Positions 1 through 60,340 of a stretch of DNA of 64,000 nucleotides are shown here, in pieces. The stretch is from assembly GCF_902459465.1 (NCBI RefSeq), contig NC_047062.1, forward strand, positions 17,236,001 to 17,300,000. The letters run 5' to 3'. Source of the DNA: Asterias rubens. Lineage: Eukaryota. Below the pieces are notes generated by a model that saw only the letters and a program-made list of their open reading frames with translations, was not told the origin of the DNA and made no database searches. Both the position numbers and the translations under genes were made by a program. Each line of letters begins with the position of its first letter. Within the stretch, counting starts at the first letter, position 1.

Positions 1-1165
1 CACACCTGCGTCTCCCAAGACGAACTCCGTGTTTTGTTTGAGGCGGTGGAGAAAGCTCTAAGAGGTGGGGCTTTCAAGATAGATAATGACCCTGACAATG
101 ATGATAACCTGGTGGTTTGGGATTTCCCCGGTGCCGTCTTCTTTACAACTACCGTCGTGACCACTATAGGTAAAACAAACAAAGTTATTGTTACTTACAA
201 TGTTTAAGAAAGTTAAAACCCTGTGAAAATAAANNNNNNNNNNNNNNNNNNNNNNNNNNNNNNNNNNNNNNNNNNNNNNNNNNNNNNNNNNNNNNNNNNN
301 NNNNNNNNNNNNNNNNNNNNNNNNNNNNNNNNNNNNNNNNNNNNNNNNNNNNNNNNNNNNNNNNNNNNNNNNNNNNNNNNNNNNNNNNNNNNNNNNNNNN
401 NNNNNNNNNNNNNTAACATCAACTACAACAACAACAACAACGACGAAGATGATGACACAACATACAACAAAAACAATAACATCAACACAGAAGAGCATAT
501 TTCAGACGGAATAAAATATATGATTGAATAATTTTATTTCAGGCTACGGCAATCTGGCACCGAAAACCTCGCTCGGACGTGTTGTGTGCATGTTTTATGC
601 AGTGGTAGGGATTCCACTCACTTATTGGTTACTATCAGCAGTAGGTGATACGTTCCAGGGCTGTTGGCGGCCGTGTCATGGCCTTATCAGACGGTGTACG
701 AAGAACATCAAAAACAACGCTCTTCGCACCACCCTAGAAGTAGCCATGATAGGGACAGTATTGTACGTCATTCTAGTGGCGCTGCCAGCTCTCCTCTTCA
801 GTTACCTGGAAAATTGGAACTTTTTCCAGAGTCAGTACTTCTGTTTTATCTCCTTGAGTACAATAGGATTCGGTGACTTTGTGCCCGCCGAGCAGACGGA
901 CTTGTCCCCACTGTACCGGTGGGTGTACAAACTCGGCACCGTAGCTTATCTCATAGTCGGTCTGAGCATTCTATCTGTGGCCTTTAAGGGATTCCTGAAC
1001 TCGCAACAGTCAACACTTAACAAGTGGAAGGCCAAAAAGGCGGCCAAAAAGCTGATGGAACTCCAGAAGCAACAGCCGCAGCAACATGCTTCCCCAAGCG
1101 CTACAATAGACACAAGTAACGGAGTGGTCAATACAACGGCTTGCTTCGATGACAGTTTAGACTGA
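1..1165 (+). CDS. Two-pore-domain potassium channel (K2P/KCNK family), paralog 1; 5' end lies outside the window
   Basis: Exons <1-169 and 543-1165 (phase-1 GT-AG intron 170-542, which contains the N gap). The spliced protein has a cap/P1 region WDFPGAVFFTTTVVTTIG|YGN, then TM2/TM3, P2 FISLSTIGFGD, TM4 and stop TGA at 1163-1165. Confidence 0.92.
234..413. other. Assembly gap (180 N) next to an (AAC)n-rich tract
   Basis: Run of N, followed by aac/aacaac repeats at about 415-490. Confidence 0.99.
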
Positions 1166-5228: not shown

Positions 5229-7016
5229 ATGAAACCATGGGTTAAATCCCTCGTACTTTTACCAGTCTTCCTTGGCTACATTTTCATCGGGTCCTCTTTC
5301 TTCCTTAAGATTGAGGGGCCACACCAAGTGACCGTGAGGGATGAATACTTCGACTTTCTGCGGCTGTTCGTTCAGAATAACTCGGCTTGCGGGATGTCTG
5401 TAGATGACCTTAAAGCTATACTTACTCACGTCAACGTGGCGAAAGCTGAGGGGCTGCTGCACCCCGAGACCATTTTAAATGAAGGGGTGTCCAACGTCTG
5501 GACCATGCCGAATTCCATTGTGTTTGCTTCCACGATTGTCACGACCATTGGTAAGTTTTGAAAACTGTGTGGTGTTTGCAGTAGAATGGAGAAACATTGG
5601 TTTCGAGAGTAAAAAAACAACCTGAAACTAATGACTATTTGGAAACCTATTTGTTTGGGCACTGATAATTTAAACTTATAGTTTCTTCTATGTAATGATG
5701 ACAGTTTTTCTGCAGTGGAATGTAGAAACACATTATTGGTTTCGAAAGTAAAAACCAATCTGAAACTGATGACTATTGGAAACTTATTAGTTTAGACACA
5801 GATGATTTAACCTTCGTTTCTTCTTTTTAATGATGACAGTTTTTTGCAGTGGAATGGAGAAACACAATATTGGTTTCGAGAGTAAAAACCAATCTGAAAC
5901 TGATGACTATTGGAAACTAATTAGTTTAGGCACTGATGATTTAAACTTAGTTTCTTCTTTTTAAACAAAGTAATGGTGACAGTTTTCCTGTTCGAAGTAT
6001 TTATCAGGACCATTTCCTCTAAGGTATAAACATGAATTAAATGCTCACCAGAGTATTATGAATTTCATCAAAGCTTAGCAGAGTCGCTATTTTTCTTTGT
6101 CATGCAATATTTCAAATTAGTCTTCCATTGGCAAGCATGCTTATTTAAAACATACATTTTGTGTTATCTCTGTCGTTTCACAGGATATGGCCGGTTGGTT
6201 CCTAGAACAGTTGGTGGACAAGTCTTCTGCATCATTTACGCTATATTTGGAATCCCCATGTGTTACTTCATGCTATCCGTAGTCGGCGATACCTTCCAGA
6301 GTCTCTGGCACCACTCTAAACGACTCTTCGATAAATCCCTCATCTGCATCCAAGCCAAGAAATCACGTCTGGTGATAGGTGGTCTGGTAACCTGTATCGT
6401 TATATGGACGGTTACTATTGCTCTGCCGTCTCTGGTGTTCGTGGCAACCGAACACTGGAACTTCGGTCATGCCCTGTATTTCAGTTTCATCTCAATGAGC
6501 ACCATCGGCTTCGGAGATTTCACCTTTGGGATCGAACAGAGTAAACCACTGACGACACAGCAAGACTGGATCTACAAGCTGGGTATACTGCTGTATTTCT
6601 TGATCGGTCTTAGTGTGATATCAATTGTTTACAGAGGAGTATGGCGGGCTCAACGGGCGCGATTGAAGCGGGCTGGTGCGACAACCCGTCGGTTCTTGCA
6701 GAGGGGCGGACGGTATGGAAGCTACTCCCTCGGTGCACATCCCGAGGTGTCCTCTTCGGTGGGTAGCGGTGTCCAGCTCAAAACAAGCAACGACTTGGCT
6801 GTGATTCATGAGAACTCGGAAGAAGAGGATCATATGAACGCCGCAATGGCCATGGATGCAATGGAGACGAACCGACGTCGCTCCTCTGTCTTCACAATGT
6901 CTTACACACAAGTCATGGGTTTAAACCTGGCTAACTATGACTCGGGCCATTGGTCGAACAATGACTCGCTCATAGAGGAAGAGACCAATGCAACTGTAAG
7001 CGAGCATGAATTCTAA
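5229..7016 (+). CDS. K2P channel paralog 2 (384 aa predicted, long cytoplasmic C-tail)
   Basis: Exons 5229-5550 and 6184-7016 (ATTG|gtaagt...acag|GATAT). TM1, cap Cys (SACG), P1 ASTIVTTIG|YGR, P2 FISMSTIGFGD. Confidence 0.93.
5570..5985. repeat. ~135-bp tandem repeat, about 3 copies, in the intron of K2P paralog 2
   Basis: Unit gcagtggaatggagaaac...aaccaatctgaaactgatgactattggaaac...gatgaca restarts at about 5575, 5705 and 5840. Confidence 0.85.
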
Positions 7017-10728: not shown

Positions 10729-11390
10729 CACTTATCATAATGGATTGTGGTTAAACTAATCAAATTTAGTCAATACGCCACACACACGCAAACCCAGTCG
10801 TTTTGCCGGGTGTGGTAGGAGATTCCCCCGGATATTCTGCCCATCCCCCAATACGGCAAATTGTGTAAAAATTTGTTCTGATAACGCCCTCTGTTGAATC
10901 CTCCTCCTTCAGTCCATATTAGTTTTTCATGGGACAGAATCTCCGCAGACAGATTTTCTCAGGACACCGAAACGTGATTTAACAACAGAAAATCATTTGT
11001 TGCATTATTGCATTTTGTCAGAAACCGATTCACCTGTCTTGACAATACCACGAGACTCTGCAAAGCGTTACTAAGCAAGGCGAGTCCAAAAAGACCCTCT
11101 TTTTCAATGCATTTTCTATGCCTCTTCTGGTTATAGAGCCAGTTTGTGTACGTACAAACCAGGAATGTTGCTTGAAAGATGATTGATTGCGTAACAAGTG
11201 CCAATTAAAATATACAACGTTGTTTACGTCTCATAAAACCGGTATAGATAATGATTGCATGTATGGCTACCACCAAATCTGATTTTGTACGAGATGTTTA
11301 GGTTTATGGGGAAAATTTCGGCCGCTGTTCGACTTCATGTTAGTTTATTTATTGTATCGGTCAACGGTGACTGATTTTACATAGGCTCGA

Positions 11391-11709
11391 AAAAGAAAAG
11401 AAAAAAAAATTAATATTCTTTATCCCCGATGCAAATTTAACATCTATTAAATCGTTTGCAGTACCCGCTGCTAAAACATAGGATTCGAACTGCCTCTAGC
11501 TACCGGGCAACCTCGGTGGTCTAGTTGGTATGACACTGCTCCAGAATTGCAAAGGTCGTGGGTTCGAATCCCACCCGAGTAAAATGCCTGTGATTTTTTC
11601 CACAGGACTCGGGAAAGTACTGAGTATACAGTGCGACACACATCGGTGTATACGGGTAAAAAAACCAAAACAAAAACCAAAAAAATAATAATAATAATAA
11701 TAATAATAA
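11391..11709 (+). mobile_element. tRNA-mimic 258-bp repeat family, monomer insertion with (TAA)n tail
   Basis: 13-bp TSD tacataggctcga (11378-11390 / 11710-11722). Internal tRNA-like module at 11510-11582 with A box tggtctagttgg and B box ggttcgaatcc. Confidence 0.85.
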
Positions 11710-12994
11710 TACATAGGCTCGAGTTGAAAGGGTTGAGAGAAAGGACAACTAGGCCTTGTGAATATCACAAGATTATTAGAAATTACAAGTTTTAAGGTTC
11801 GTGACCAAGAGCTATAGTTTCAACACCCTTGTCAACCAAATCGGCCTTTACTATCTCATACCGGTATCCGTTGAGTATAGTATTATCTATGTCGTTGAAA
11901 TGAAAATACAAAGTGATTAAGGTAGAACGGATGGTTCGATTGACTTTAGTGGTATATTCACTTGCCTTCCACTTCTAGAGGGCCCTGGTTCGAATCTAGC
12001 TGGGGCATGTGATTTGGGCTTTCAGTCCCCAGTGTTTTCCTTGAAATAGTTTTCTGTGGTTTTCCTATACCATATAAAACTGAAACTTCCTTCCTGATCT
12101 TTTCTCCACAGGGCTCTCGGCTATCACAGTGATTTAAAAGTTTGCCTTTCTGTGAGTCCTTGGTTCAACAACCAGAATATTAAATGAAACAAAATATTAT
12201 GTGGCTGAGTACTAACGTTTAGTACATTATTATTCAGCTGTGTGGATGTTTGTAATGGTATAAACAAAACGGTTCTTCTATGTAATTTTGGATGTTCGTA
12301 TTGTAAAGCCAGGTTCATACTTCCTGCGAATGAATGCGATGCGAATTTTGACGTCACATGTAAACGAAATGCCATACGTTGCCATGCATCGTCACCAAAC
12401 GGTTACCCGTATTCCGTAACTAAACGATTTTAAAAGGAGGCAAAAAACAAGAGGGACCGGGTGTTCACATAGTACGTTCTATACACAGTCATTTGTACTC
12501 AACAAACCTAAATATTCATTGTTTCGTCACAATTTAACTCCATCTACACATAAATTATAAAGCGGAGTAGAGACATTCAAGGTCGAGTGTCGACGGAGTG
12601 ACCATGAATATCATGAGCAAACCAATGTAGAATCAAAGAATATAATAATAATAATAATAATAAAGTAGTAGTAAACGTGATATTTGTATACCGTATAATG
12701 CAGGAACCTCTATGTATTTATGGTGATTTGCATAGTTTGTCCAATCAACCGTAAAACAACACCAATACAAACCACTGGTATCCATTCAAATTAGTTACAA
12801 GTATTGATGTGTTTCGGTACACCCGCAATAATACTTGACTTTCATAAAAAGAGCTATGCACATAATATCATTTACCAGAATAAGGGTTACAAGCCAAAAT
12901 ACCATGTCATAATGTGGTCATCTGTGGACTGGTATCCTACTTATTTAAGATCAACAGAAATGTTGCAGAAGAAATGTTGTAAGTAATTGTCTGC

Positions 12995-13357: not shown

Positions 13358-13376
13358 AGAGGCCTTTTAAGAATTT

Positions 13377-13660
13377 GGGTCCTGGTCATAATAGTGTCAT
13401 AGTTGGGTCCTGGTCATAATAGTGTCATAGTTGGGTCCTGGTCATAATAGTGTCATAGTTAAGTCCTGGTCATAATAGTGTCATAGTTGAGTCATGGTCA
13501 TAATAGTGTCATAGTTGGGTCCTGGTCATAATAGTGTCATAGTTGGGTCCTGGTCATAATAGTGTCATAGTTGAGTCCTGGTCATAATAGTGTCATAGTT
13601 GAGTCCTGGTCATAATAGTGTCATAGTTGGGTCCTGGTCATAATAGTGTCATAGTTGAGT
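13377..13660. repeat. Minisatellite, 28 bp x 10
   Basis: Unit (g/a)(g/a)gtcctggtcataatagtgtcatagtt, head-to-tail with no spacers. Confidence 0.97.
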
Positions 13661-14087
13661 TGCAGAAGGAAACTGCATTGAAACAATTATTGTTCTACTT
13701 TAAGCCACGCCCATTTCAGGCAGGTCTGTATTGCAGTCTTTTCATTGGTCTGGACACCTAAAGAAATTCCTATTCCTCAACACTGTGGATAACATTGTGT
13801 GGACATGCGTAAGTCCACATCAAGTCTCTACATTATGTGGACTTCTCAAGTCCATACTTCGTATGTTAAATCATACAAACTGGCACCAATGGTTACCAGA
13901 ATCCAATAGGAATTACATTCAGCAATTTTATTATTATTTTTTTTTTTTGGGGGGGGGTGTGAAAAAAGGGTTGATTGAACTTGGCTTTCGCATACGCTCT
14001 TCAGAACCACACAATGTGTGAACGTTTGTGTGACTTTCTGTAGAATTACACACAAACATATGCCGCACTTGGAGCTGGAAATAGCGA

Positions 14088-14206
14088 GTTGAAACCAACG
14101 GTTGTTTTCAGAACCAGCCTAACTCATTGGAGATAGTCATACAGGATGTTACCGCAAACCTTTCCATATCTTTCTGATGTCAATACTTTTTATAAAGTCC
14201 AATTGT
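14088..14206 (+). mobile_element. TSD-flanked short retrocopy of the hammerhead-bearing (Penelope-like) repeat
   Basis: 14-bp direct repeat gctggaaatagcga at 14074-14087 and 14207-14220. The interior is nearly identical to 15389-15495. Confidence 0.75.
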
Positions 14207-14759: not shown

Positions 14760-16220
14760 ATGGGCTGCAAGAAAACACTCATTTTGTTTGTGTGTTGGAT
14801 TATTTACCTGTGTCTCGGTGCGTTGGCTTTCATCGCAATAGAGAAAGGAAACCTTGCGACGCAGCAGGAGGCACGTGCAGAGTTCAACGAGGCAGTCGCA
14901 GACTTTGCCCGCGAATACTCTTCGTGTGGAGTTACCAGAGACAGTCTGTTGACGTTCATGGTAAACAATGGACGGCACACCCAGACAAGAGGTGTGTTCC
15001 ACTTTAATGTAGATCCCTCGAAGGGGGTTCAAGAAGAATGGTCAATGACTAATGCGTTGGTCTTTACCTCCGAAATTGTTACTACCATAGGTGAGCATTT
15101 AGAAACTTTAATGGTGTCCAGAATAGCATCACACTTTCTCTCTCACTCTAGTAAAGGCTTTCTGATGTCTAAGTAGGATTTGAAACTTTGCATGGTGGAA
15201 ATACGATATGGAAATGGTTGTGGTAACATCATGTATAATGACTTCTATCTCTAATGAGTTGGGGTGGTTCTGAAAAAAACCGTTGGTTTCAACTCGACGT
15301 TTCGATCAGTATGCTTTGATCGTTTTCTGGAGAATACTTCCTCCTTTTCTCCAGAAGACGATCAGAGCATACTGATCGAAACGTCGAGTTGTTTTCAGAA
15401 CCACCCCAACTCATTGGAGATAGTCATACAGGATGTTACCGCAAACCTTTCCATATCTTTCTGATGTCAATACTTTTTATAAAGTCCTATTGTGCGGGGC
15501 AGACATTACACTCTTAAAACGCACATGGCCCAATTTCATAGAGCTGCTCAGCACAAACAAGTTCCACATATTGATCTAGTGTGTCTTCAACGAAAGTAGA
15601 ACAAGAAGATAAGAATGAATAAAAACGAAACTGTTTCCTATTCCTCTTTTAAAGGTCACGGCACGCTGACACCCTACACCGCCAGAGGGCGTCTCGCCTG
15701 CATTTTATACGCCCTCTTCGGCATACCACTCTGCGGCTTCATGCTCGCAGCCGTCGGTGACGCGGCACTCATCCTAGCCGATAAAATCGACGGAGTTTTC
15801 CGAAGGCGTCTCCGACTTGCTCTCCTAGTGAACGCTGCCCGTCTCTTCGTCATTGTATTGGTATTCTGGTCGATTACGGTGACGCTGCCAACGTTGATTT
15901 ACACCAGGACGGAGGGGTGGAACTGGGTCAAGGCACAATACTTCAGCTTCACAGGCATGAGTACAGTCGGCTTCGGAGACGTGAAGGTTAGCCTTCATAG
16001 ATACAAAGACTCAGTATTATTAGACTGGTGCTACAAAGGTGGCACAACCGTGTACTGCTTCCTCTGTCTTGGTATTGTCTCCACCGTCTTTAAGGTTATG
16101 TTTCGGTGGCACAAAAACCACATCCAGCAGACCAGAGCCAGATTCCGAACGTGGAGGCGAAAAAACTGCACTTCTAGAAGACGGTCCTCTAATTTAGCAT
16201 TCTTGAATACTCAGGACTGA
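14760..16220 (+). CDS. K2P channel paralog 3 (298 aa predicted), atypical P1 filter TIGHG
   Basis: Exons 14760-15090 and 15655-16220 (ATAG|gtgagc...aaag|GTCAC). Cap Cys (SSCG), P1 FTSEIVTTIG|HGT, P2 FTGMSTVGFGD. Confidence 0.9.
15172..15458. repeat. Inverted pair of Penelope-like repeat ends forming a long hairpin in the intron of K2P paralog 3
   Basis: The left arm (about 15172-15334) is the reverse complement of the family sequence in the right arm (15347-15458); loop tacttcctcctt. Confidence 0.85.
15349..15388 (+). ncRNA. Minimal type-I hammerhead ribozyme-like motif (U4A variant)
   Basis: CTC-CAGAAGA-C-GATCAG(agcata)CTGATC-GAAA-CG-TC^GAG: 3-bp stem I, 6-bp stem II, palindromic ACGT stem/loop III, GUC triplet. 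The sister copy at 46728 has the canonical CTGAAGA. Confidence 0.6.
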
Positions 16221-18231: not shown

Positions 18232-19528
18232 ATGGGGATACGAAGGAGGTACCGCACGATACTCGTATGCCTCGTGTTCTGGATCTACCTCGCACTTGGC
18301 GCGCTTTCCTTCATGGCCATCGAGCGGGAAGCAGACGATGCCGAGACCAAACTCTCTCGGCGGGAACTTTACCGCGCACTGCAAAACTTCAGCGAAGAGA
18401 ACCGGGAATGTAACGCCACGACGGAGAACCTCCGAGGGCTCATGGAACAGGCTGAGATAGCTTGGAAACTCCGGAGAGTATTCCGTACAGACACTGATAC
18501 TACGAAGGGTATAGAGCCGGTGTGGAACATCGCTGACTCGATGGGCTTCGCGCTGTCGATACTTACTACTTGTGGTGGGTATATCCGTTTTAGTGCCAAC
18601 CAGCGTGTTGTAGCCATTTTCTTAAAAACAAAAATCCTTTGGTTCTAAGTGATGGCTTTGGGTACAATTTTTCATACATAATAGAGCTTTTATACCGCTT
18701 TTTTTGCCGTACCATATATGGACTAACAGAGACTCCTTTCTTTCATGCTTGGGCACACTGAAACATCGAATTTGAGAGCAAACAAATAAACGGTAATTCA
18801 ATAGCCATGTCCCTTCCCTTTCGGTGTATGTGGATTGCTTTGCCATATTAAACAATGAATAATGCTTCATAATCAATTAGTTGCCAACTATGGTTTTCTA
18901 GTCTATCCACCCTTCTCATTTATCTGTAGGCTACGGCGAATTGGTACCCATTACAAAGACAGGACAACTCATCTGTATTATCTACGCAGCTGTTGGTATC
19001 CCGTTATGTTACTACATGATACTGACCGTAGGCAAGACTTTTCGAGATTTGTGGTTTGCAATGTTGAGCTCTTCTTGCCAGCGATACAAAATCCCACGGC
19101 GAATTTCATACTTCCTCGTTCCCGTCATAGCACTGTGGATAGTCTTAGTCGTCTTCCCCAGCCTGGTGCTGATACAGACGGAGGGATGGCCTCTTTTGAC
19201 GGCACTGTATTTCAGTGTCATGTCGCTCAGTACCATCGGCTTCGGAGATGTGATGCCGCGAAGACCGAACCCGTATTCTGCTTTTTCTAATACCATGAAA
19301 CTGATCTTCATATTTTATATCCTGCTCTGTCTGAGCGTCATGTCAATCACGTTTGCATGTATAGCCAGGGTGCTTAAAGAATTCAAATCAAAGAGGAGAA
19401 GGAAGCAACAAGATGCCAGTCAGCGAAGGAATACGTTGGAAACGAACATTGATTTTGATGAAGAAGTAGAACCATATCGGGTTTGTAACGGCGACTCTCC
19501 CGTAAGCTCCACTGGGTCTGACTCTTAG
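18232..19528 (+). CDS. K2P channel paralog 4 (313 aa predicted), atypical P1 filter TCGYG
   Basis: Exons 18232-18574 and 18930-19528 (TGTG|gtgggt...gtag|GCTAC). Cap Cys (RECN), P1 ALSILTTCG|YGE, P2 VMSLSTIGFGD. Confidence 0.9.
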
Positions 19529-25900: not shown

Positions 25901-28900
25901 TTCAACACTCGCAATTGGGACAGTTTGCTCAGCTTTCCAAGGTCAAAGGTTACGTTGGGCCTGCAGGAAAAAACAAAACAACGATAGTGTTTTTTTTAAT
26001 ACAGCACGGAAGGACCACACTGAAAGAGTCTACCAAATACCTTGTCCAGGATTGATCAGAAAACAGTGTACTGAATTCTACATTGGAGAGATAGAAATGG
26101 TCCCACAAGACTAGGTTATTGGAGCACCATGCCCCAGTTTGTCCTTTTCCGAGGGTTCTCAACACATCCGTATAGAATCACCAGGTCATCACACAGACAT
26201 TTCAAAAGTAAAAATCTTAAACAGAAACCCTTGTGATGCTTCAAAAGGGGTGAAGAAGGCAGCTTTCATCAGAACCAACTTTAAGGTTTGGAAATATTTC
26301 AAGTGTTAAAACACCAACTGTATTGTAATGGTGTTTCAGTTTGGGTGAAAAAGATCACAGGGTTTCCAGATTCGGATTCCCTTGTCCATTTGGGAAATGA
26401 TTATACTAATCAGGGTAAGCAGATGCTCATAGTTGTAATTGTCCCCTAGTTTCCTCATTGGGGATCAATTTTACCCTCATCGAGGTAAGGGTTACCAAAC
26501 AGGGTAGGCATATACCTCAAGAGGGAGAGTTGTGGTGCCAAGATGCTCATGATGTTGTTGTCCAATAGTTTCGCATTGGGGATTGGTGATACCCTCATCA
26601 AGGGAGGCCAAATAGGGTAGGAGTATACCCCAATCTGGAGTTTAACTAACCTCTTTGAGAACATTCCTTCCAGCCAGTGTACTTGCAGAACTCTTAAGTC
26701 TGGTAGACACTGTGGGACCTGACTGATGACGGAGGTGGAAGCGTGGCCAAAGTGAAGGTACTGCAGCTGAGGAAGTCTCTTGATTATAGAGTAGATGTCC
26801 CTCATGTAAACGCTTCTAGTAAACTCCATCATCGTGTTGTTGTAAAAATCCTAAAAGATGGATGATTTTCATGGACAACTATAAAGATCATGGACAATTA
26901 TAAAGATAAAGAAAATGGGCAAACACATGGCCTTATAATTAATAATAAGAATAATAATAATAGCGACTTCTTTTATAGCCCTAATATATCCATCACTCAG
27001 TGACGCTCAAGGTGCTTCAATATTCAGTATTTTCCTGCAAGGTATTTTAGAGCTTTGTTTTGAAGTATGAGACCAACATGGTATTATTGATTCTTTTTTG
27101 GTCTTTTTCTTTTTTATCTAAGAGGAAATTGCCTCATTTTAAACAGATGACCAGGTTAAAACAGATATCTCCATGAACAAGTCGCACAAACTAATGATTC
27201 TCAGTGTGATGTACATTGTTTCCGCAAGGTCAAGTAGAGAGAAGTTGAATTCAAAGTTCTTTATTACTATAAGCCTGCTTTGATTGACTTACCAATGCAA
27301 TGGTTCCACGTGCTTGAAAGATTTTGACAGCTTTTGGATAGTCCTTCACTTGTGTACCTTCCAGACTCACGTTCTTCCACTGCAAAATGTAGTAAACAAA
27401 TAAATATATTAATTTTGGTTTTTACCCATACACCGATGTGTGTTAGCACTGTATACTCAGTTCTTTCCCGAGTCCTATGAAAAAATATCACAGGCAAGTT
27501 ACTCGGGTGGGATTCGAACCCACGACCCTTGCAATTCTAGAGCAGTGTCTTACCAACTAGACTACCGAGGTTGCCCGGCAGCTAGAGGCAGTTCGAATCC
27601 TATGTTTTGGCAGCGGGTACCGCAACGATATAATAGATGTTAAATTTGCATCGGGGATAAAGAATATTAATTTTGGTTTTTACCCATACACCGATGTGTG
27701 TTAGCACTGTATACTCAGTACTTTCCCGAGTCCTGTGAAAAAATATCACAGGCATGTTACTCGGGTGGGATTCGAACCCACGACCCTTGCAATTCTAGAG
27801 CAGTGTCTTACCAACTAGACTACCGAGGTTGCCCGGCAGCTAGAGGCAGTTCGAATCCTATGTTTTTGGCAGCGGGTACCGCAACGATATAATAGATGTT
27901 AAATTTAACATCTATTATTAGAATTGCAAGGGTCGTGGGTTCGAATCCCACCCGAGTAACATGCCTGTGATATTTTTTCACAGGACTCGGGAAAGTACTG
28001 AGTATACAGTGCTAACACACATCGGTGTATGGGTAAAAACCAAAATTAATATTCTTTATCCCCGATGCAAATTTAACATCTATTACAAATAAATATAGAT
28101 TAAATTACAGCATTGATTTCTGTGTGTGCTCCATCTTATCTGTTCCTTTCGAAGATGCATACTCATGTTGAGTCTGAGTCCGAGTCTTTAGTGTTGACTT
28201 TGAGTCTGATTCCTTGGTGTCGAGTCCGAGTCCGACTTCTCAGTCTCTAGTCTGAGTCCAGGTCCTCAGTGTCAACTTTGAGTCCGAGTCCTCAGTTGCG
28301 AGTTTCAGTCTGCACCCTCATCTTGATTCTGAGTATCCCACCCTTTACTGTTGACTTTGAGTCTGAGTTTTCAGTGTCAAGTTTCTGTCTGATCCCTAAG
28401 TCTCAATCTCAGTCTGAACCCTCAGTCTCAAGTCCGAGTCCGAGTTTTTAGTGTTGACTTTGAGTTTGAGTCCTCAGTGTAGAGTCTCAGTCGGCACCCT
28501 CATCTTGAGTCTGAGTACCGCCTCTTAAGTGTTGACTTTGACTCCGGATTCTCTCAGTGTCCAGTGTAAGTCTCAAGTTTCAGTCTCAACCCTCAGTCTC
28601 CATGCAGTCTGACTGCTTATAACTTGCTTTCTTTAAAAAACTAAAAAACCCAATGTACAATAATTTTAAAAATGACCAAAGTTTACAAACCAAGCTTTTA
28701 TCTGTAGACAGCTGGTTCCACATTCTGCAAACTAAGCCGACCCTCAATAGGTCACTCGCAGAGAGGTAGTTGAAGATCCTAAGCAGACAGTATTGAGGCA
28801 GTGCACTGATGTGATCACTGCCGTACACACTTGGATCATTGGTAGAGGTTGACGAGGCACCATTGGATGAACGTGTTTTCACCTGAATAGGTCAATAACA

Positions 28901-40611: not shown

Positions 40612-43600
40612 TCAGAGTTTCTTGGTAGAACTGGCTGGAACCATCACTCTGAAAATTAATGTAAATATTGAAGGTTAGAACATGTCGGCAAACGAATCAT
40701 TGTGGTTTCAGCTCCTAAACTATGGGTTTGGAAGCGTACCTGGCACCAGGCCTCTAGGTACCAGGCAAGCTCGGTGGTCTAGTGTTTAGACATCTGCTCT
40801 AGCGTGATATTGGGTTCGAATCCCACCCGAAAAATAAGCCTTTGGAATGTTTTTTCAATAGTAATTCTCTCCCCGTCCCCCAACCGATTGGAACGCAGAA
40901 GACCATGCAATGAAAGCCAACATTGAAAGGGGGGGCACAGGGGCCCAACGAGATATGGCCGGGATAATAGCTGAATGCTAGAAATAAATCAACTGGAATA
41001 AGGCAGAGTGTTTGTGTTTTTTAGAACTGTTCGCATACCTTACTCCTCTGGTGTCATTCCGGATGTTTCTGTTTCATCCTCCATGAAGGGTTCATACGTC
41101 GGTGCCGTCTCGCATGAGTCCAAGAAACGATTCCACTTCTCTCCCGGTTTGCAGCATGTGTTGAACGAGTCCGGAGTCAACCACGTCTTGGCCAGGATCC
41201 TCTCGTTACAGCATACTTCCTCTGAGGAATCGTAAGCCGTCTGGTTACAGCAACGCCCGTAGGCTACACCGACCGTCACGGCGCTCCAAATCACAGCGGT
41301 ACCGTTGTTACTAGATGAGATGCCCTGGCAGCAAGTTGCATTCTCTGGTCTGTACAGAAGGCTTTGGCAGCATTGATAGTCATCCGTTACGTTTTCTTGG
41401 GCTCTGAGAACGTTGCATTCTTCTTCAGATATTTCTGGGTACTCTGTGCTGTCGGGAACAGTGCTTGTCTCATATGAAGAGATTGTGGTCACTCTTGTCG
41501 TTGATAGCTCATCAGGCTGCTCTGCGATTCTGGGAATGACTGTTTCAGATTCGCCGCAGTACTCTGAGCTGAGATTGTAGAGCTGGTCACCACAGCAACC
41601 ATGTTGAAGCCGATCGTAGATGACTCCTCCGCACAGTGGCCTCAGGGTTGCGTTTACAGTTGGCTGGGTACCATCACTGATCTCAGAATCCTGGTCAGCC
41701 GATGGAGAAACTATTTCATCACAATATTCAGTGGTGCGGTTGAACACAATCACTCCACAACATCCGTGAGTGGAGGGATTGTAGGCGATGCCATCACAGA
41801 TTCCCCCGATCAGTCCGCCCATGCAGGTCTCATTGGTTAGCTTGTATAGAGTACCATGACAGCAGCCCTGAGTGTTGGGATCGTAAGCCAGACCATTACA
41901 CACCACCCCTGTTGTCTTGGTAGCATCTCTCGGCATCATACGCTCCAGATGAGGTGTCCTCCCGTCAGCATTCGTGGTCGTTTCGATGCCCAGCTCCATG
42001 GCGTCTGTTCCGTTTCCGGCAACCCTTTGGGCGTGCTCCGTCTGCCTGGCATAAATCCTATGAGTCGTGTCTTCAAGACCTCTAGTTTGGATATCTGCGT
42101 CTTGAAGACCCCTAGTTTGGATGTCTGTGTCTGGGCATTGTTGTTCTCCCTTGTTGATGACGACACCGTTGCAGCATTCTTGCCATTTGGATTGGCGTGA
42201 GACGGAAGCATTTCCACAGCAGATGACACGACGGGCGTCACGTATGATGTTATTGCAGCATATTGTGTGGTCTCCATAGTCTCTTGCCTGAAGAGGAGAA
42301 GAACAAAAAATCATACTGAAACATTGCCCCTTACTTCCTTGGTTCACTTGCCTACAGGTGACCTCGATCCTGTAATATTCTCCTGTGTCACTCCACACCA
42401 TTATGTTTGGACTTGGATAAGATTGGAATGCCTGACTCAGCGATGAGCAATTCTTGGTTGGGCCTACAACCCTAAGTCCTTTCAGAATCAATTTGATGCA
42501 TCCTTTTAAGAATGATCCATCAGAGTTGTAAACAATGTGTTTCATCAGTGTATAATGCAGGCCAGGAATATGTAGACCAGGCTTTGCATTTTGCAAAGGG
42601 CACTTCCATTGGAAAATCTTAAAGTCAAGGGGAAACTTTTGAAGGGGCACCAAGGCCAAGACCAGGGGCAACTGAGGCCATGGCGTGCATGTATTTCGAG
42701 GCATGTAGTGTTTTGGGCAGAATCAAATGCTAGTATCAGTTTCTACATACCTGAATTCTACCATTGCAGCAAATCTCCTGTGACGGGTCCCTCACAACCC
42801 CTTGCCCGCAGCACTCCCCATCGGTAATAAACTTATGCAGCATTCCCTGGCAGCAGGTGTGGAGCGTCTCATCGTAGCCATCGCTCCCTCCGCAGCAGGA
42901 TTGTCCACTGGTCCTCAGTAGGGCAAACTGATGCCCGGCCGTACTACAGCACTGACGCTCGGTTGTGTCAATAGCCTGGTTACCACAGCACTGTAGCGTG
43001 GGGGCGTCGGTGTACAGGGAGTCGCCACAGCAGAGTGGCGAGGGTTGAGATGCTGGGTCGTAAGCCACCCTACCACAGCAGTGAGTTCCATGATCAACCT
43101 TGGAATACCTGCCAGTAAACAAAGTAAACGCTCATAAATAAATAAACTCCAGTAGAAACAAATTATTTCTGAGCTTTAAAAAAAAATTATGTTTTAGTAA
43201 GGGTTGTTACTTTTGATGGTACATGATTATCGTTTAAGCGAAATGTTGAGGCTGTTTTTCAAAATTACACAGATACCTGTGGTGCACTAGTGTATCCAAG
43301 AAGATCGGATTTTGCATTGGAACTGTGAGTTGGATGAGTGCTTTGGTTTTACTTTGTTTCTGATCTACATTAGCCTTTTTGAGATATGGCGGACACTAAA
43401 GGAGTGCACTGTTTGGTTTGGGTGTATACATGCAATTTTATCTGTCCTAGCATTGTGTGCATTACGAAGGTATTTCAGACTTACATGTGGCCGTCGCAGC
43501 ATATCGTGGTATCGTTTATGATGGACCTTCCACAGCAGTCTCCGTTAGCTACACCATACAGCACTCCATTGCAAACTGTCTCTATTGGACTGTGTGCAAC

Positions 43601-46600: not shown

Positions 46601-49600
46601 TGTGGTAGAGTAGGGGTTAACAACAACAATGTTTCTGGTCCACATAGCAAGCACTCTTAATTACAGGTTTCCTCAAGCATGTGATTAAGTTCACTTATGT
46701 GGAATCTTTGGTTTCATTGCCAGAATTCTCCTGAAGACAATCAGAGTCTGCTGATTTGGAACGTTGAGTCCTTAACCACCGGTTCTTTTCAGAACCAACA
46801 CCACTCAAAAGAGATATTCACATGGTGTTACCGCAAATTTCTCTTAGTTATACTTCCACCATGCAAAGTTTCAAATCCTACAGAAATAAATGATACGGCT
46901 TAAGTCACTGGCTCTTACCTCTCCCACAGCATTGCATCCCTGGCTGTCTATCATGAAGGTTTCCTTCGCAGCACACTTGATCAGTCTTGAGATACGACTC
47001 TTGCTTACAGCAGCCTTGTACTTCATTAATCTTAGGGACATGATGGATCTTTCCATAGCAACATGAGTCCAGCGAACTGCTGTATGGCGTAGCACGGCAG
47101 CAACTTCCATGACCTAAAACGAGTTCCAACAAAGGAAGTTGTTAATACATTAGTTTCAGAACCCGCTTAGTACAGAACTCATCTCAGAGCATTTGGAGCA
47201 GTCTGACAAAATGTTGGCCTCAGATCAAGCTGAGATTGAACCAGTAGATTCAGAATGCCCATGTTCCTTTACTCTCTGCATTTGAATTGTAGAGGGTACT
47301 ATAACATGATCTCTCAAAAGAAAAATGACAGGGTCTTAAATAATTCTTGTGAATGATGACAGTTTTGCAGAGGACTGGATTTGGGTTCGAATCCCACCAT
47401 AGTGATTTGCCTGTGGATGATTTTCATAAAACACAGGAAAGAGTATAAAGTGATTAATTATAATGGTAAATGTAAGGGCAAGGGCACCAAGGCATTGCCT
47501 TTTTGGTAAAGGGCACCCTGTGAGGAAATTGTAAATTTCTACTGGCGGAGCATTTCAAAAATATAATTTTCAAAAGTATAATGTTATGTTAGGTAGATTC
47601 ATCAATTACTCACCAATGTCGTATAGAACTCTGTTTGTACCAAACCCACAGCACACCTTATTGGCTGGGTTAAAAGCGTTGGTGGCACAGCACTCTGTTT
47701 CTCCATCTGTCAGATCTCTTACTGTGTCCTCGCAGCAGATTTGTGAGCGAGTGTCAAAGGTCGTTCCGCCGCAGCAGTCGTTGTAGGGAGTTTTATCTTT
47801 CTGGGCCTGGGGGGGGGGGGAGAAAAAAATTACTTATCATCTGAACCAAAGTTTTGTACAATTTTGCGAAACATAAAACTGGACAAACAAAAGCGAACAA
47901 CTGACATCCTCAACGTCAGACTTATTTGAAGCTTCAAGGAAACAAACAAATCATAATCTACATTTTGTTGTATTTCTTCATCTATTAATCACTTCTTGAT
48001 TCCTCCTGATCGCAATGAGGAAATGAATGATTCAAAATGAAACATGATATAAAGCCGACTGAATTGATCAACAGCAACGTACCTGATTACAACATCTTGT
48101 CTTTGTGGTATTGATAGCAGTCAGTCCGCAACATTCAAAGTCTCCATCTATCACTGCGTCCTGACCAATCACATGAACCTCACTGGCAGGGTTGGGCTGG
48201 TGTCGTTCACAACACATATCGGTCTCTGGATTGAAGAGCTTGTCCGCTCCGCAGCAGGACCCAAGACCGACCCTTGGGGCGTACTCTACACCGTTAAAGC
48301 AACATGTCTGATAGGAGCTGTCTATCACTGTTGAACCACAGCATACTGAATCTATTAATAGAACATAGATACCAGAGACAATCGTTTAGGATTAGGAAAT
48401 TTATCCATTTAGATACAAGAAAATTGATTGGGAAATCTATTAATTTGAAATAGATACAAGAAAATGCATTGGGATATTTATCGATACAACATATACAAGA
48501 AAATGTATCAAGAAATCTATTATGTAAAACAAAGATACAAGACAATCTATTACGAAATCTATCCATACAACATAAGTACCCAAAAAAATTATTAGGAAAG
48601 TTTTCCTCATGTATCAAACCCTCATGTGTTAAATTGAAGACTCCGTCTCTTCATATTTAAGAGCAATGTTCATAGGAAATTGTTGTGCAACTTTTGGACC
48701 TTTGTCAACAAGGGCTCAATTCATATTGTTAAGAACATTTTGCTTAAAGAGTTTCTGCTATTGATAGATGTTTATAGAAGTAACTGCAAAACAACTAACC
48801 CTTACAAGATGTTCAACATGCATGAGTGAATGTCATTTTCAGCGGCACCTCTTTCAATTGCAAAATTATTTAGTTTTTTTTTTCTTTTTCTCTTTCTTTC
48901 CGTTTGGTGTGTGTTTATATGTGTTTCCTCCAGGTGTACGCAAAACCAACAAAGTATTTGGCACCTTTGACTTTTGAGTGAGGATGATGCAAGAATGTGC
49001 AAGAGAGACTTGGGACAAGGAACTGCCATTAATTCATGAGGCAGGGTTAAGTTTCCTGTTGATAAAAACTTCCTCTTACACAACAACACTTTGGGTCATA
49101 TCACATGAGGCACTGGGATGTATAGGCTACCAGTTCTAAGCCTCCTCAATAAAGAGACGGCCATTCACTTGTTTAATTATTCACATTTACGGCGAAGAAC
49201 TAAATGTTACACTGTTCCTTCTTGAAGGCATTCTCATAACACTCTCTGTCATGTGATTGGAGGATTGTAGGTCACATGTCAACCATCTCTGTCAAGTGAT
49301 TGGAGGATTGTAGATCACATGGCATTCATCAGTTTAGCCAGTGCATAGCCTACATCACAAACCACGTAGTTTGGAACTAATCACGAAGTGACTACTGCAC
49401 ACCAAGACACCCTCAGTGGTGATGTCAGAATACAATCTTGTGTACTTTATTTATTCTGGTAGTTTTATCCACCAATCAAGTGACTAAAATCTACTTGGAT
49501 GTTATTATGAGTGTTTTGCATTTTTTTCTTTTTGCACTCTCCACCAATAGGAATAGGGAAACTGTCTGAGGTATTTATGAATACTAATTAATGGTTCATC

Positions 49601-58045: not shown

Positions 58046-58219
58046 GTGGATCGTTAAATTGAAAACGCAAAACATCATAATTGCTCACTCAGTTGATTTT
58101 CGATGACAGCTTTTAAATTCGCGTAAACTGGAATAACGCGACGTTTAAATTAACCTCTTATATTTTGCCAAAAAAATACCGGGAAATGTTGCATTGTATA
58201 ACAAAACGAAGGTCTAAGT

Positions 58220-58517
58220 GATGTTAAATTTGCATCGGGGATAAAGAATATTAATTTTTGGTTTATACCCATACACCGATGTTTGTTAGCACTGTATACT
58301 AAGTACTTTCCCGAGTCCTGTGAAAAAAATATCACAGGCGTTTTACTCGGGCGGGATTAAAACCCCGGACCCTTGCAATTCTAGAGCAGTGTCTTACCAA
58401 CTAGACTACCGAGGTTACCCGGTAGCTAGAGGCAGTTCAAATCCTATGTTTTGGCAGCGGGTACCGCAACAGTATAAGAGATGCTAAATTTGCATCGGGA
58501 TAAAGAATATTAATTTT
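58220..58517 (-). mobile_element. tRNA-mimic 258-bp repeat family: terminally redundant 1.15-unit insertion
   Basis: The ~40-bp gatgttaaatttgcatcgggg-ataaagaatattaatttt segment is present at both ends. TSD acgaaggtc(g)taagt (58206-58219 / 58518-58532). Confidence 0.85.
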
Positions 58518-60340
58518 ACGAAGGTCGTAAGTTTGATTTGTTTTCTTGAGAAAAAAACACCATTGCACATGCCGCCATCATCGCTGAGGTCAAATAATGG
58601 AACCCGCGCGCAATTTTGTTTTCCCTGTACATCCAAATTGCCATCTCAAACATTTTCCTTAATGATGTTTTTTTTAGAATTCCCTTTTTGAATCGATTTA
58701 GAAAAAGAAGAAAAAATCCCCATTGAAAAGCACTACGACAGTGGGAATTTTTATTTTCAGAAAAAAATGCAACCCGTGCATGCATCCGCGCCACACACAA
58801 CCCTCGTCCAATGAAACGAGAATTGAGCTTTTGACGTCATTAGGTGTGGTCAATTTCATGACACTGATGGTCGGCTGTTGTGTATCAGACTTATCATGAA
58901 TACAGTATTCTAGAAACTAATAAAGTATCAAAACCTGAGCTCACCTTTTCGGAAAAGAAAAACAATGCGAAACTCTGTTAGCAGTAACCGGAATGTTTGC
59001 GGGGTATCAAAGGTGTGGTTCGCAGAATGTTAGAGATTGAAGGCATCGAAAGCAATAGCGTTCGAATTCAGACTTTCTGTCATACTTATTCAAAATAATA
59101 AAACTAAAACAATGTTCAGTCGTAGCAATTTTGCAACACCAATTGTCATTTCTCAGTGATGATTGCTTTTGTTTCGTTCATAAAATAGTGTGATACGAAG
59201 TAATGAAAGTGACTTTGCAATTCACTAACCCAAACACATTCGCTAAAAAGTGTGTAATGATTACAACGAAATCATTGTTTATGACATATGGAGAAGATGG
59301 TATGGGTTCGTACCTTATATGGCCATTTTGATATACATTGTACATTGCAAAAACTGGGGTGTTAAATTGACACCATGGGTGTTGTCACACATAGCCACAT
59401 AAAAAAATTATACAGGAAGTAAAATAACACATCCATGATGTCAATTTCAACACCCTTCCAGATCTTCAAACCAACTCGAACACTAAACCGATGCTGTAAA
59501 TAGTCTGGCTCCTATCACAAAAAGTTTTTTATTTATTTATTCAATTCATGACAGAAGTTGTACAAGTTTACCCCTCTCTTTGGACGTTTATTGACCTCTG
59601 GAAACAAAGTCACTGAAGTTTTGCATAATTTATAGAGCACCTTGATCGGCTGTTCAGACCAGGGCCAAACTTCATAAAGCTGGTAAGCAGGGAAACAAAT
59701 GCTTGATAAATTTCTTTGCTTAGCAAAACAAAATAGTGGGGCAACAGTCACAGCGATGAAATTAGGTAATTTTGGCTGGTACCTTACTATACCAACACAA
59801 ACAAATCATAGAGTTGCTAGTAAGCGTATTTTATAATTCTTTTGGACACATTGACTTTCAAGCTTATCCCATTTTTATCTTAAGACTATTTTCTGCTTTT
59901 CCCCCAGAATTCTTTCGAGCGTTTCTCTTACAATATTGTCCCTTATATAGGAAACTCATAGCTTTAAGAAATAACAAATAAACAAACAAAAAAAACATTG
60001 AGAATTTTAAAGGCTACTATTTTGAAAGTCTCTTTTTAATTTGGTTCTCTGGAAAACGAATCATGATGTCTAATCTTGCAGACTCATTTAATTGACTACC
60101 AATAAACGGTTAGCTTCCTGTCCCTTCCGGCCAATGCAAGCCGATATTGCATTTTACTTTAACTGAACTGCACCCTTTTGTCGATGTCGTCATTTTCTGT
60201 TGAAATGTTTTGGATTTTTTTTTCTCACGGTGGTCTAATATTGTGTGGTTTTCCATTCCAACGGATGTATTATGTCCATGGTTATACTGAGATTTCTTTC
60301 AAATAAATGCAAGATATTTTGGGGTATTTTTTTATTTTCT

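What the first reader, a model, noticed from the sequence alone, without database searches (positions are those of the whole stretch)
11378..11722. tRNA-mimic retroelement whose Pol III module sits in the middle of the inserted unit
Seen: a 13-bp TSD and (TAA)n tail flank exactly one 258-bp-family unit, yet the tRNA-like part (A box, D-arm GTCT/AGAC, AGA-centred loop, T-arm GTGGG/CCCAC, short variable loop) starts about 120 nt inside. It is followed by short hairpins and a T6 run. Established: ordinary tRNA-SINEs begin at their tRNA head because Pol III starts there. Inference: the mobilised RNA is not the simple Pol III transcript but a permuted unit cut from a multimer or circle. This resembles retrozyme-like propagation, but I find no hammerhead, HDV or twister core, so the tRNA fold might instead recruit RNase P/Z or a ligase.
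Basis: partly seen in the sequence, partly recalled or inferred. Interest (0 to 1): 0.75.

Follow-up and report, generated by a model that had tools for sequence, protein, structure and literature searches.

The report
Penelope-style tandem retroposon with tRNA-like gene
This 319-base insert is an ordinary copy of a short jumping element, present in thousands of copies in a starfish genome, that carries a tRNA-like gene in mid-unit and bears the insertion scars typical of Penelope-like retrotransposons, but lacks the self-cutting ribozyme of its closest known relatives.

Summary
Identical 13-bp duplications (11378-11390, 11710-11722) bracket a 319-bp insert. Its tRNA-like module (11510-11582) starts 119 nt inside, a T6 run in a hairpin follows, and the tail is A-rich plus (TAA)9.

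Family anatomy explains the odd layout better than a "cut" circle. The unit is 259 bp (1,502 exact copies of a 29-mer). In 41 duplication-bounded inserts:
- 5' ends fall anywhere in the unit, and 29 of 41 inserts cross a unit junction.
- 3' ends fall at only two sites, 33-34 nt apart.
- Target duplications peak at 12 bp.
- 19 of 41 carry a head-to-head inverted arm.
- Counting head-to-head inserts without a clear duplication too, 20 of 21 have one long and one short terminus.

These are the published hallmarks of Penelope-like element insertion: 5' truncation, partial tandems, an inverted copy, and a ~30-bp tail at one end only.

No hammerhead or other known ribozyme is present. RNA reads show mostly copies embedded in host transcripts and no ends at the tRNA-like borders. 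The autonomous partner was not identified.

The RNase P/Z or ligase idea is unsupported.

This scan had already met this family on other DNA of the same genome (s1-180025, s1-178626).

The parts
11378..11390 (+). left target-site duplication (13 bp)
   Evidence: exact repeat of 11710-11722
11391..11409 (+). A-rich 5' start of the insert, matching the A-rich segment (unit ~205-222) of the preceding unit of the template
   Evidence: aligns to unit 209 onward; in tandem copies the same A-rich stretch precedes TTAATATTC
11416..11449 (+). 34-nt 'tail' segment lying between the two alternative 3' termini of the family (unit 226-259)
   Evidence: 3' ends of 41 inserts fall either just before or at the end of this segment
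11451..11509 (+). leader (unit 1-59), partly complementary to the tRNA-like part
   Evidence: the minimum-free-energy fold pairs it with the tRNA-like module; z-scores -5.4 and -6.6
11510..11582 (+). tRNA-like module with A and B boxes, anticodon AGA, short variable loop
   Evidence: ARAGORN; Rfam tRNA 41.8 bits
11587..11606 (+). hairpin whose loop holds the T6 run (11594-11599), a Pol III terminator-like signal
   Evidence: T6 is also present in the family consensus
11607..11657 (+). 3' body with short hairpins (unit ~155-205)
11658..11709 (+). expanded A-rich tract plus (TAA)9: the short-type 3' terminus (family consensus AAAATTAATA) with slippage
   Evidence: other short-type ends also carry variable A-rich expansions
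11710..11722 (+). right target-site duplication (13 bp)
27409..28084 (-). second insertion of the family: inverted arm (unit 93-259, long terminus) joined through a 15-bp-arm palindrome to 1.9 direct units (short terminus). Flanked by a 13-bp duplication at 27396-27408 and 28085-28097
58215..58517 (-). third insertion: unit 216-259 plus 5-254. Flanked by a 9-bp exact duplication (13-14 bp allowing one indel) at 58206-58214 and 58518-58526

Best explanation
The insert is one copy of a non-autonomous retroposon family built from a 259-bp unit. It was pasted in by target-primed reverse transcription of Penelope-like-element (PLE) type.

Shown: an endonuclease cuts both strands about 12 bp apart, at a weakly palindromic site of the form (A)AC|WA...|GTT. 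cDNA starts at one of two template sites 33-34 nt apart: within AAAATTAATA at unit ~226, or at CTATTA at unit 259. It runs a variable distance (128 to more than 1,200 nt) along a sense RNA that continues across unit junctions, then stops at a random point. In about half of the events both DNA ends prime, which gives a head-to-head inverted insert. One terminus then almost always keeps the 34-nt tail and the other lacks it.

Inferred:
- The enzyme is the RT and GIY-YIG endonuclease of a resident PLE acting in trans.
- The template is a multimeric (or rolling-circle-copied) transcript not made by Pol III.
- The tRNA-like module is a self-contained Pol III gene (A box, B box, T6) that travels with the unit. 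It is not the head of the transposed RNA, and its benefit to the element is unknown.

For: Family size: 1,502 exact 29-mers and 4,200 matches of the 3'-end 19-mer with up to one mismatch. In 41 duplication-bounded inserts: duplications of 12 bp in 20 and of 11-13 bp in 30; 3' ends 23 times at ~226 and 18 times at 259; 5' ends spread over the unit; 29 cross the 259->1 junction; 19 have a head-to-head inverted arm, and in 18 of those 19 its outer end is a canonical 3' end. Among all head-to-head inserts, with or without a clear duplication, 20 of 21 combine one long and one short terminus (p 1e-5). Target site: C at -1 in 22/34 (p 2e-8) and G just after the duplication in 18/34 (p 2e-5). Inverted/direct junctions show 0-15 nt of overlap, short fillers or palindromes. 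The published PLE hallmarks are the same four: 5' truncation, partial tandems, an adjacent inverted 5'-truncated copy, and a 30-40-bp tail at one end only; non-autonomous PLEs give multicopy head-to-tail inserts (PMC8557442; PMC3846280). In this window a mini-hammerhead-bearing PLE-type tail (15170-15456) is also head-to-head, with a 12-bp duplication and arms that end 32 nt apart. Its 33-nt tail aligns to this family's tail at 21 of 33 positions (p ~0.01). The genome holds at least 118 GIY-YIG matches, many in identical 921-aa open frames and some spaced ~4.4 kb apart in tandem. The two subfamilies differ at 8 sites, all in unit 1-134 and none in 135-259, so the 3' half is the constrained part.
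Against: No autonomous partner was shown. None of the five GIY-YIG hits on contig C1 that the lists reach lies within 5 kb of an exact 13-mer or 19-mer of this family's 3' end, or of the exact 21-mer of the hammerhead-type tail. The tail similarity is short and was noticed post hoc. The sample of about 60 loci is partly biased: the first 23 were picked with a permuted query. Twin priming by a LINE also gives inverted 5' arms. The RNA data show no dedicated template RNA.
Confidence: 0.72

Rival explanations
1. An ordinary LINE-dependent tRNA-SINE whose copies became tandem or inverted through template switching and twin priming by a LINE reverse transcriptase.
For: tRNA-like module with A and B boxes. 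A-rich and (TAA)n ends on some copies, as in SINEs whose LINE partners have microsatellite tails. Target duplications and 5' truncation also fit LINE target-primed reverse transcription.
Against: The tRNA-like part is never the preferred 5' end (2 of 41 at unit 58-60). A T6 follows it after 14 nt, so a Pol III transcript would lack both 3' termini. An inverted arm in 46% of inserts, outer ends always at canonical 3' sites, the one-long-one-short rule (20/21) and a near-fixed 12-bp duplication with a symmetric target are not LINE traits.
Confidence: 0.12
2. One reading: the tRNA-like fold recruits RNase P/Z or the tRNA splicing/ligation machinery to cut multimeric RNA into unit-length or circular RNAs, which are then reverse-transcribed by rolling circle. 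This would be a ribozyme-free retrozyme.
For: Inserts longer than one unit, up to 4.6 direct units in one event, and no transduced flanking sequence in 41 inserts, fit a pure-unit multimer or a circle. No hammerhead, HDV, twister or other Rfam ribozyme at E<=10, so something else would have to process the RNA. The unit RNA is much more structured than shuffled sequence (z -5.4).
Against: The DNA termini (unit 226 and 259) do not coincide with the tRNA-like borders (60 and 132). In the unbiased sample, 5' ends show no excess at those borders. In four RNA runs, 61-84% of the reads laid run on into unrelated sequence, and no molecule ends pile up at 27827 or 27755. RNase P/Z products (5'-phosphate, 3'-OH) are not substrates of the RtcB-type ligase that circularises retrozymes (established knowledge; the RtcB role is in PMC7229834). 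Multimeric transcripts from genomic arrays explain the same DNA data.
Confidence: 0.1
3. A DNA-level repeat (satellite, Helitron/Helentron cargo or segmental duplication) rather than a retroposon.
For: Long arrays exist (at least 14 units on C3, 7 on C4).
Against: Dispersed copies carry their own 12-bp duplications, fixed 3' ends, random 5' truncation and A-rich slippage. Helitrons make no duplications.
Confidence: 0.03

Closest known systems
Non-autonomous Penelope-like elements (e.g. the Chlamys-dependent MRC1 of Chlamydomonas; pLTR-mediated trans-mobilisation in Adineta vaga)
   Same: 5' truncation, multicopy head-to-tail inserts, head-to-head inverted arm, a ~30-bp tail at one end only, short target duplications (PMC8557442, PMC3846280)
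   Different: Here the unit carries a complete tRNA-like Pol III gene, and no autonomous partner with a shared 3' end has been shown
Metazoan non-LTR retrozymes (Cervera & de la Pena 2020; Li, Clavereau & Pollet 2026 preprint)
   Same: 170-400-nt units in short tandems, non-coding, duplications longer than 4 bp, proposed dependence on PLEs
   Different: No type I hammerhead or any other known ribozyme, and no evidence of abundant circular RNA. A tRNA-like gene sits where retrozymes have the ribozyme
tRNA-derived SINEs
   Same: tRNA-like module with A and B boxes; high copy number; retroposed with duplications
   Different: The module is internal and is followed by a T6. The element has no fixed 5' end, inserts as concatemers and inverted pairs, and has two 3' termini
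Mini-hammerhead plus histone-stem-loop PLE-type tails of the same genome (window 15170-15456, 46725-46881)
   Same: 12-13-bp duplications, head-to-head arms ending ~32 nt apart, and a 33-nt tail with a similar core (ATGCAAA..TTT.A.ATC)
   Different: Those carry a hammerhead and a histone stem-loop and no tRNA-like gene

Membership tests
PLE-type (Penelope-like) insertion / non-autonomous PLE | fixed 3' end with frequent 5' truncation | tested here: met
   3' ends only at unit ~226 or 259; 5' ends spread over the unit
PLE-type (Penelope-like) insertion / non-autonomous PLE | partial head-to-tail tandems (pseudo-LTR-like) | tested here: met
   29 of 41 inserts cross the unit junction, and 12 of 24 in the unbiased sample
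PLE-type (Penelope-like) insertion / non-autonomous PLE | adjacent inverted 5'-truncated copy, head-to-head | tested here: met
   19 of 41; outer ends canonical in 18 of 19; junction palindromes in W2, L078 and L042
PLE-type (Penelope-like) insertion / non-autonomous PLE | [quoted passage not shown] | tested here: met
   34-nt segment; 20 of 21 head-to-head inserts have one long and one short terminus
PLE-type (Penelope-like) insertion / non-autonomous PLE | 3' end shared with an autonomous RT + GIY-YIG element of the same genome | tested here: inconclusive
   GIY-YIG ORFs are abundant, but no exact terminal 13/19-mer lies near five of them. PLE 3' ends could not be fetched
Non-LTR retrozyme | type I hammerhead ribozyme in every unit | tested here: not met
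   no hammerhead or other ribozyme family at E<=10 on either strand of 27300-28200; no CUGANGA...GAAA core on reading the unit
Non-LTR retrozyme | short tandem units of 170-400 nt bounded by duplications | tested here: met
   259-bp unit, 0.5 to more than 7 units per insert
Non-LTR retrozyme | abundant unit-length circular RNA | tested here: inconclusive
   RNA reads are plentiful but 61-84% run into flanks. Short-read poly(A)/random libraries cannot tell a circle from an array transcript
tRNA-derived SINE | tRNA-related promoter head at the 5' end of the element | tested here: not met
   the module occupies unit 60-132; only 2 of 41 inserts start at 58-60
tRNA-derived SINE | no Pol III terminator before the 3' end | tested here: not met
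   T6 lies 14 nt after the module in the consensus and in this copy
genuine tRNA-Ser gene | cloverleaf above the Rfam threshold | tested here: met
   41.8-48.1 bits against a gathering score of 29
genuine tRNA-Ser gene | long variable arm of class II tRNAs and clean stems | tested here: not met
   short variable loop, T.T mismatches in the acceptor and anticodon stems; about 1,500 dispersed copies

The most novel reading that the evidence does not exclude
The tRNA-like gene functionally replaces the hammerhead of animal retrozymes. Host tRNA-processing enzymes would cut or mark multimeric transcripts so that unit-length or circular RNAs become the preferred template of a Penelope-like reverse transcriptase. 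That would make these elements a ribozyme-free class of retrozyme, which arose several times in this genome (earlier scan notes list 312-bp and 318-bp families with other tRNA-like genes).
Probability: 0.12. Interest if true: 0.8.

Novelty: new variant of a known kind. Interest (0 to 1): 0.5.

Why it matters
Penelope-like elements are the least understood retrotransposon order, and no in vitro system explains their tandem/inverted scars or the one-sided tail. A very young, short, high-copy passenger family gives hundreds of clean insertion junctions to work from. From about 60 loci it already yields three rules: a near-fixed 12-bp stagger at a symmetric AAC...GTT site, two priming sites 33-34 nt apart, and one long plus one short terminus whenever both DNA ends prime. 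These rules constrain models of the PLE integration complex. The family also shows that PLE passengers need no hammerhead, and it raises the question of why a complete Pol III tRNA-like gene is kept. The locus itself is an ordinary, probably dead copy with no sign of host function.

Tried and rejected
1. Ribozyme search. Rfam at gathering score on the whole window, and at E<=10 on 27300-28200, gave only tRNA hits.
2. Partner search by coordinates. GIY-YIG hits were compared with exact terminal 19-mer, 13-mer and hammerhead-tail 21-mer places on C1. There were no co-locations. The lists show only the first 100 places and only exact matches, so this is a weak negative.
4. ORF scans. The held loci contain no retroelement ORF, and the window ORFs are K2P channel fragments and a galaxin-like protein.
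5. Shared versus private variants within inserts, to tell a circle from an array template. Result: 109 shared against 292 differing positions. This fits a few master sequences plus decay after insertion, so it does not discriminate.
6. Apparent 5'-end hot spots. The one at unit 199-210 disappears in the unbiased sample (2 of 25) and comes from the permuted first query. The one at 128-133 is also not significant.
7. RNA evidence for a circle or for processing. None was found, but short-read libraries are a weak test.
8. An unanchored local alignment of the two tails was not significant (p ~0.09). Only the anchored tail-to-tail alignment reaches p ~0.01.
9. Paper searches for a PLE-mobilised tRNA-bearing SINE, or for starfish SINE descriptions, found none. 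Repbase and Dfam could not be consulted.

Full report
**Observation**

The window reads as animal DNA. Earlier notes of this scan name the genome the starfish Asterias rubens; I did not verify that. The whole genome is 417.6 Mb in 150 contigs.

- At the given place, the 13-mer TACATAGGCTCGA stands at 11378-11390 and 11710-11722 and nowhere else nearby. It brackets a 319-bp insert.
- ARAGORN and Rfam both call a tRNA-like module at 11510-11582 (anticodon AGA, 41.8 bits against a threshold of 29).
- A T6 run (11594-11599) sits in the loop of a hairpin 5 nt downstream of the module.
- The insert ends in an A-rich tract and (TAA)9.
- Two further insertions of the same repeat lie in the window, at 27409-28084 and 58215-58517, both on the minus strand and each with its own duplication.

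The description is correct. The tRNA-like part does begin 119 nt inside the insert.

**Family**

I defined a 259-bp unit from the tandem at 27631-27889. Copy numbers in the genome:
- a 29-mer of the T-arm occurs 1,502 times exactly (reversed control 0);
- the terminal 19-mer occurs 4,200 times with up to one mismatch.

This set is biased towards inserts with the same layout. I then added 42 loci taken in positional order from the 29-mer list, which is nearly unbiased.

**Anatomy of 41 inserts with clear duplications**

- Duplications are 12 bp in 20 inserts and 11-13 bp in 30.
- The 5' end of the sense part lies anywhere in the unit. Only two inserts start at the tRNA head.
- The sense part is 128-1,217 nt long. 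It crosses the unit junction in 29 of 41 inserts, and in 12 of 24 in the unbiased set.
- One event (L045, 12-bp duplication) brought in 4.6 direct units plus 0.94 inverted units.
- Nineteen inserts begin with an inverted arm joined head-to-head to the direct arm. The outer end of that arm is again a canonical 3' end in 18 of 19.
- Junctions between the arms show 0-15 nt of overlap, a few filler bases, or palindromes.
- No insert carries transduced flanking DNA.

**Two regularities not given in the earlier notes that I could see**

First, taking all 21 head-to-head inserts with two canonical termini (with or without a clear duplication), 20 combine one long (259) and one short (~226) terminus (binomial p 1e-5). 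[quoted passage not shown]

Second, the empty target is weakly palindromic:
- C precedes the duplication in 22 of 34 inserts (p 2e-8);
- the duplication starts with T/A then A;
- it is followed by G in 18 of 34 (p 2e-5), then T and T.

The site thus reads (A)AC|WA..|GTT with a 12-bp stagger. The same motif on both strands fits one nuclease cutting both strands equivalently, and it fits either DNA end being able to prime.

**Comparison with published work**

Craig et al. 2021 (PMC8557442) and Arkhipova et al. 2013 (PMC3846280) describe Penelope-like element insertions as follows:
- 5'-truncated;
- arranged in partial tandems;
- often with an adjacent inverted 5'-truncated copy, head-to-head, with palindromes at the junction;
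- with a 30-40-bp tail present at only one end;
- with short duplications (8-10 bp in the rotifer).

They also report non-autonomous elements that insert as multicopy head-to-tail arrays, and trans-mobilisation of foreign sequence. All four structural hallmarks are met here.

Animal non-LTR retrozymes are the nearest named class: tandem 170-400-nt units proposed to depend on PLEs (PMC7229834; preprint 10.64898/2026.07.22.740005). They are defined by a type I hammerhead in each unit. No hammerhead or any other Rfam ribozyme is found at E<=10 on either strand, so this family is not a retrozyme by definition.

It is not a conventional tRNA-SINE either. The promoter module is internal, and a T6 follows it after 14 nt in the consensus. 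A Pol III transcript would therefore end about 75 nt before the first priming site.

**Link to PLE machinery in this genome**

- The genome has at least 118 GIY-YIG matches. Many lie in identical 921-aa open frames, and several pairs are ~4.4 kb apart in the same orientation, which fits young PLE partial tandems.
I found them in this window and in the held loci.
- The copy at 15170-15456 is head-to-head. It has a 12-bp duplication (15158-15169 and 15457-15468), and its two arms end 32 nt apart.
- Another copy (L047) has a 13-bp duplication with one mismatch.
- The 33-nt tail of that element aligns end-to-end with the 34-nt tail of the 259-bp family at 21 positions. Only 214 of 20,000 shuffles score as well. 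This is suggestive, short and post hoc.
- The autonomous partner itself was not identified. None of the five GIY-YIG hits on C1 within reach of the lists lies near an exact terminal 13-mer or 19-mer of the family, or near the hammerhead-tail 21-mer.

**RNA**

Four RNA-seq runs of the same species label were laid on 27300-28200.
- Depth on the element is in the thousands, against 0-8 on the flanks.
- Both mate orientations are equally frequent.
- 61-84% of the reads laid continue into unrelated sequence. Loose ends at the unit-259 boundary have many different continuations.
- No ends of molecules pile up at the borders of the tRNA-like part.

Most of the signal is therefore copies carried inside host transcripts. 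There is no sign of an abundant free circle or multimer, though these libraries could not show a rare template or a ~90-nt Pol III product.

**Other points**

- The unit RNA is far more structured than shuffled sequence (z -5.4 and -6.6). In the minimum-energy fold the leader pairs with the tRNA-like part instead of a cloverleaf forming.
- Two subfamilies exist. The copies at 27.4-28.1 kb belong to a very young type (97-99.7% identical copies).
- The subfamilies differ at 8 sites, all within unit 1-134 and none within 135-259. For eight sites placed at random the chance of that is about 0.005 (my own calculation, not a tool output). The 3' half, which holds both priming sites, looks like the constrained part. 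The two changes inside the tRNA-like part leave the cloverleaf intact.

**Verdict**

- The specific idea of a unit cut out by tRNA-processing enzymes or a ligase is not supported.
- The best reading (0.72) is a PLE-mobilised, hammerhead-free tandem retroposon that carries a self-contained tRNA-like Pol III gene of unknown benefit.
- Whether the template is a transcript of genomic arrays or a circle remains open.
- This locus is an ordinary member of the family. This scan had already reached the same general reading on other DNA of this genome (s1-180025 for this family; s1-178626, s1-180019, s1-150451 and s1-180041 for sister families). Those are unchecked AI notes and I do not count them as evidence.
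- I found no published description of such tRNA-bearing PLE passengers, but Repbase and Dfam could not be searched.

Noticed in passing
window 15170-15456 (-), duplications at 15158-15169 and 15457-15468: Head-to-head insertion of a Penelope-type tail that carries a mini hammerhead followed by a histone-mRNA-like stem-loop. It has a 12-bp duplication, and the inverted arm ends 32 nt short of the direct arm.
   Followed up: partly
window 46725-46881 (+) and 14085-14170 (+): Two further copies of the same hammerhead plus stem-loop tail. The one at 14085-14170 carries 36 nt of the flank of the 15.4-kb copy, so it looks like a local segmental duplicate rather than an insertion of its own.
   Followed up: partly
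G000:C1:7752227-7754539: About 30 exact copies of the hammerhead-tail 21-mer at a 65-68-bp period: a locally amplified array of that Penelope-type tail.
   Followed up: no
window 524-1165, 6102-7016, 15615-16220, 18941-19528 (+): Open frames with two-pore potassium channel domains (Ion_trans_2, E 1e-13 to 1e-23). Probably exons of tandem K2P channel paralogues, so the three retroposon copies sit in or between these genes.
   Followed up: no
window 41040-42704 (-): A 554-aa open frame with galaxin-like repeats (E 2e-18).
   Followed up: no
window 11930-12110 (+): Just downstream of the finding lies another repeat with a B-box-like GGTTCGAATC and a degenerate tRNA-like stretch that ARAGORN does not call. 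Probably a different, older SINE.
   Followed up: no
window 13375-13657 and 28162-28572: A 28-bp minisatellite (10 copies, 96% matches) and a degenerate 26-bp minisatellite (16 copies). The second directly abuts the insertion at 27409-28084.
   Followed up: no
L055 1050-1098: A 49-nt non-family filler, rich in A and G, sits between the inverted and direct arms of one insert. Possibly a template switch to another RNA.
   Followed up: no
one search run table: Near-identical sequence of the youngest subfamily is held by runs of three coded species labels and by several marine plankton metatranscriptomes. The family is therefore shared by close relatives or picked up from larvae in plankton samples.
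   Followed up: no
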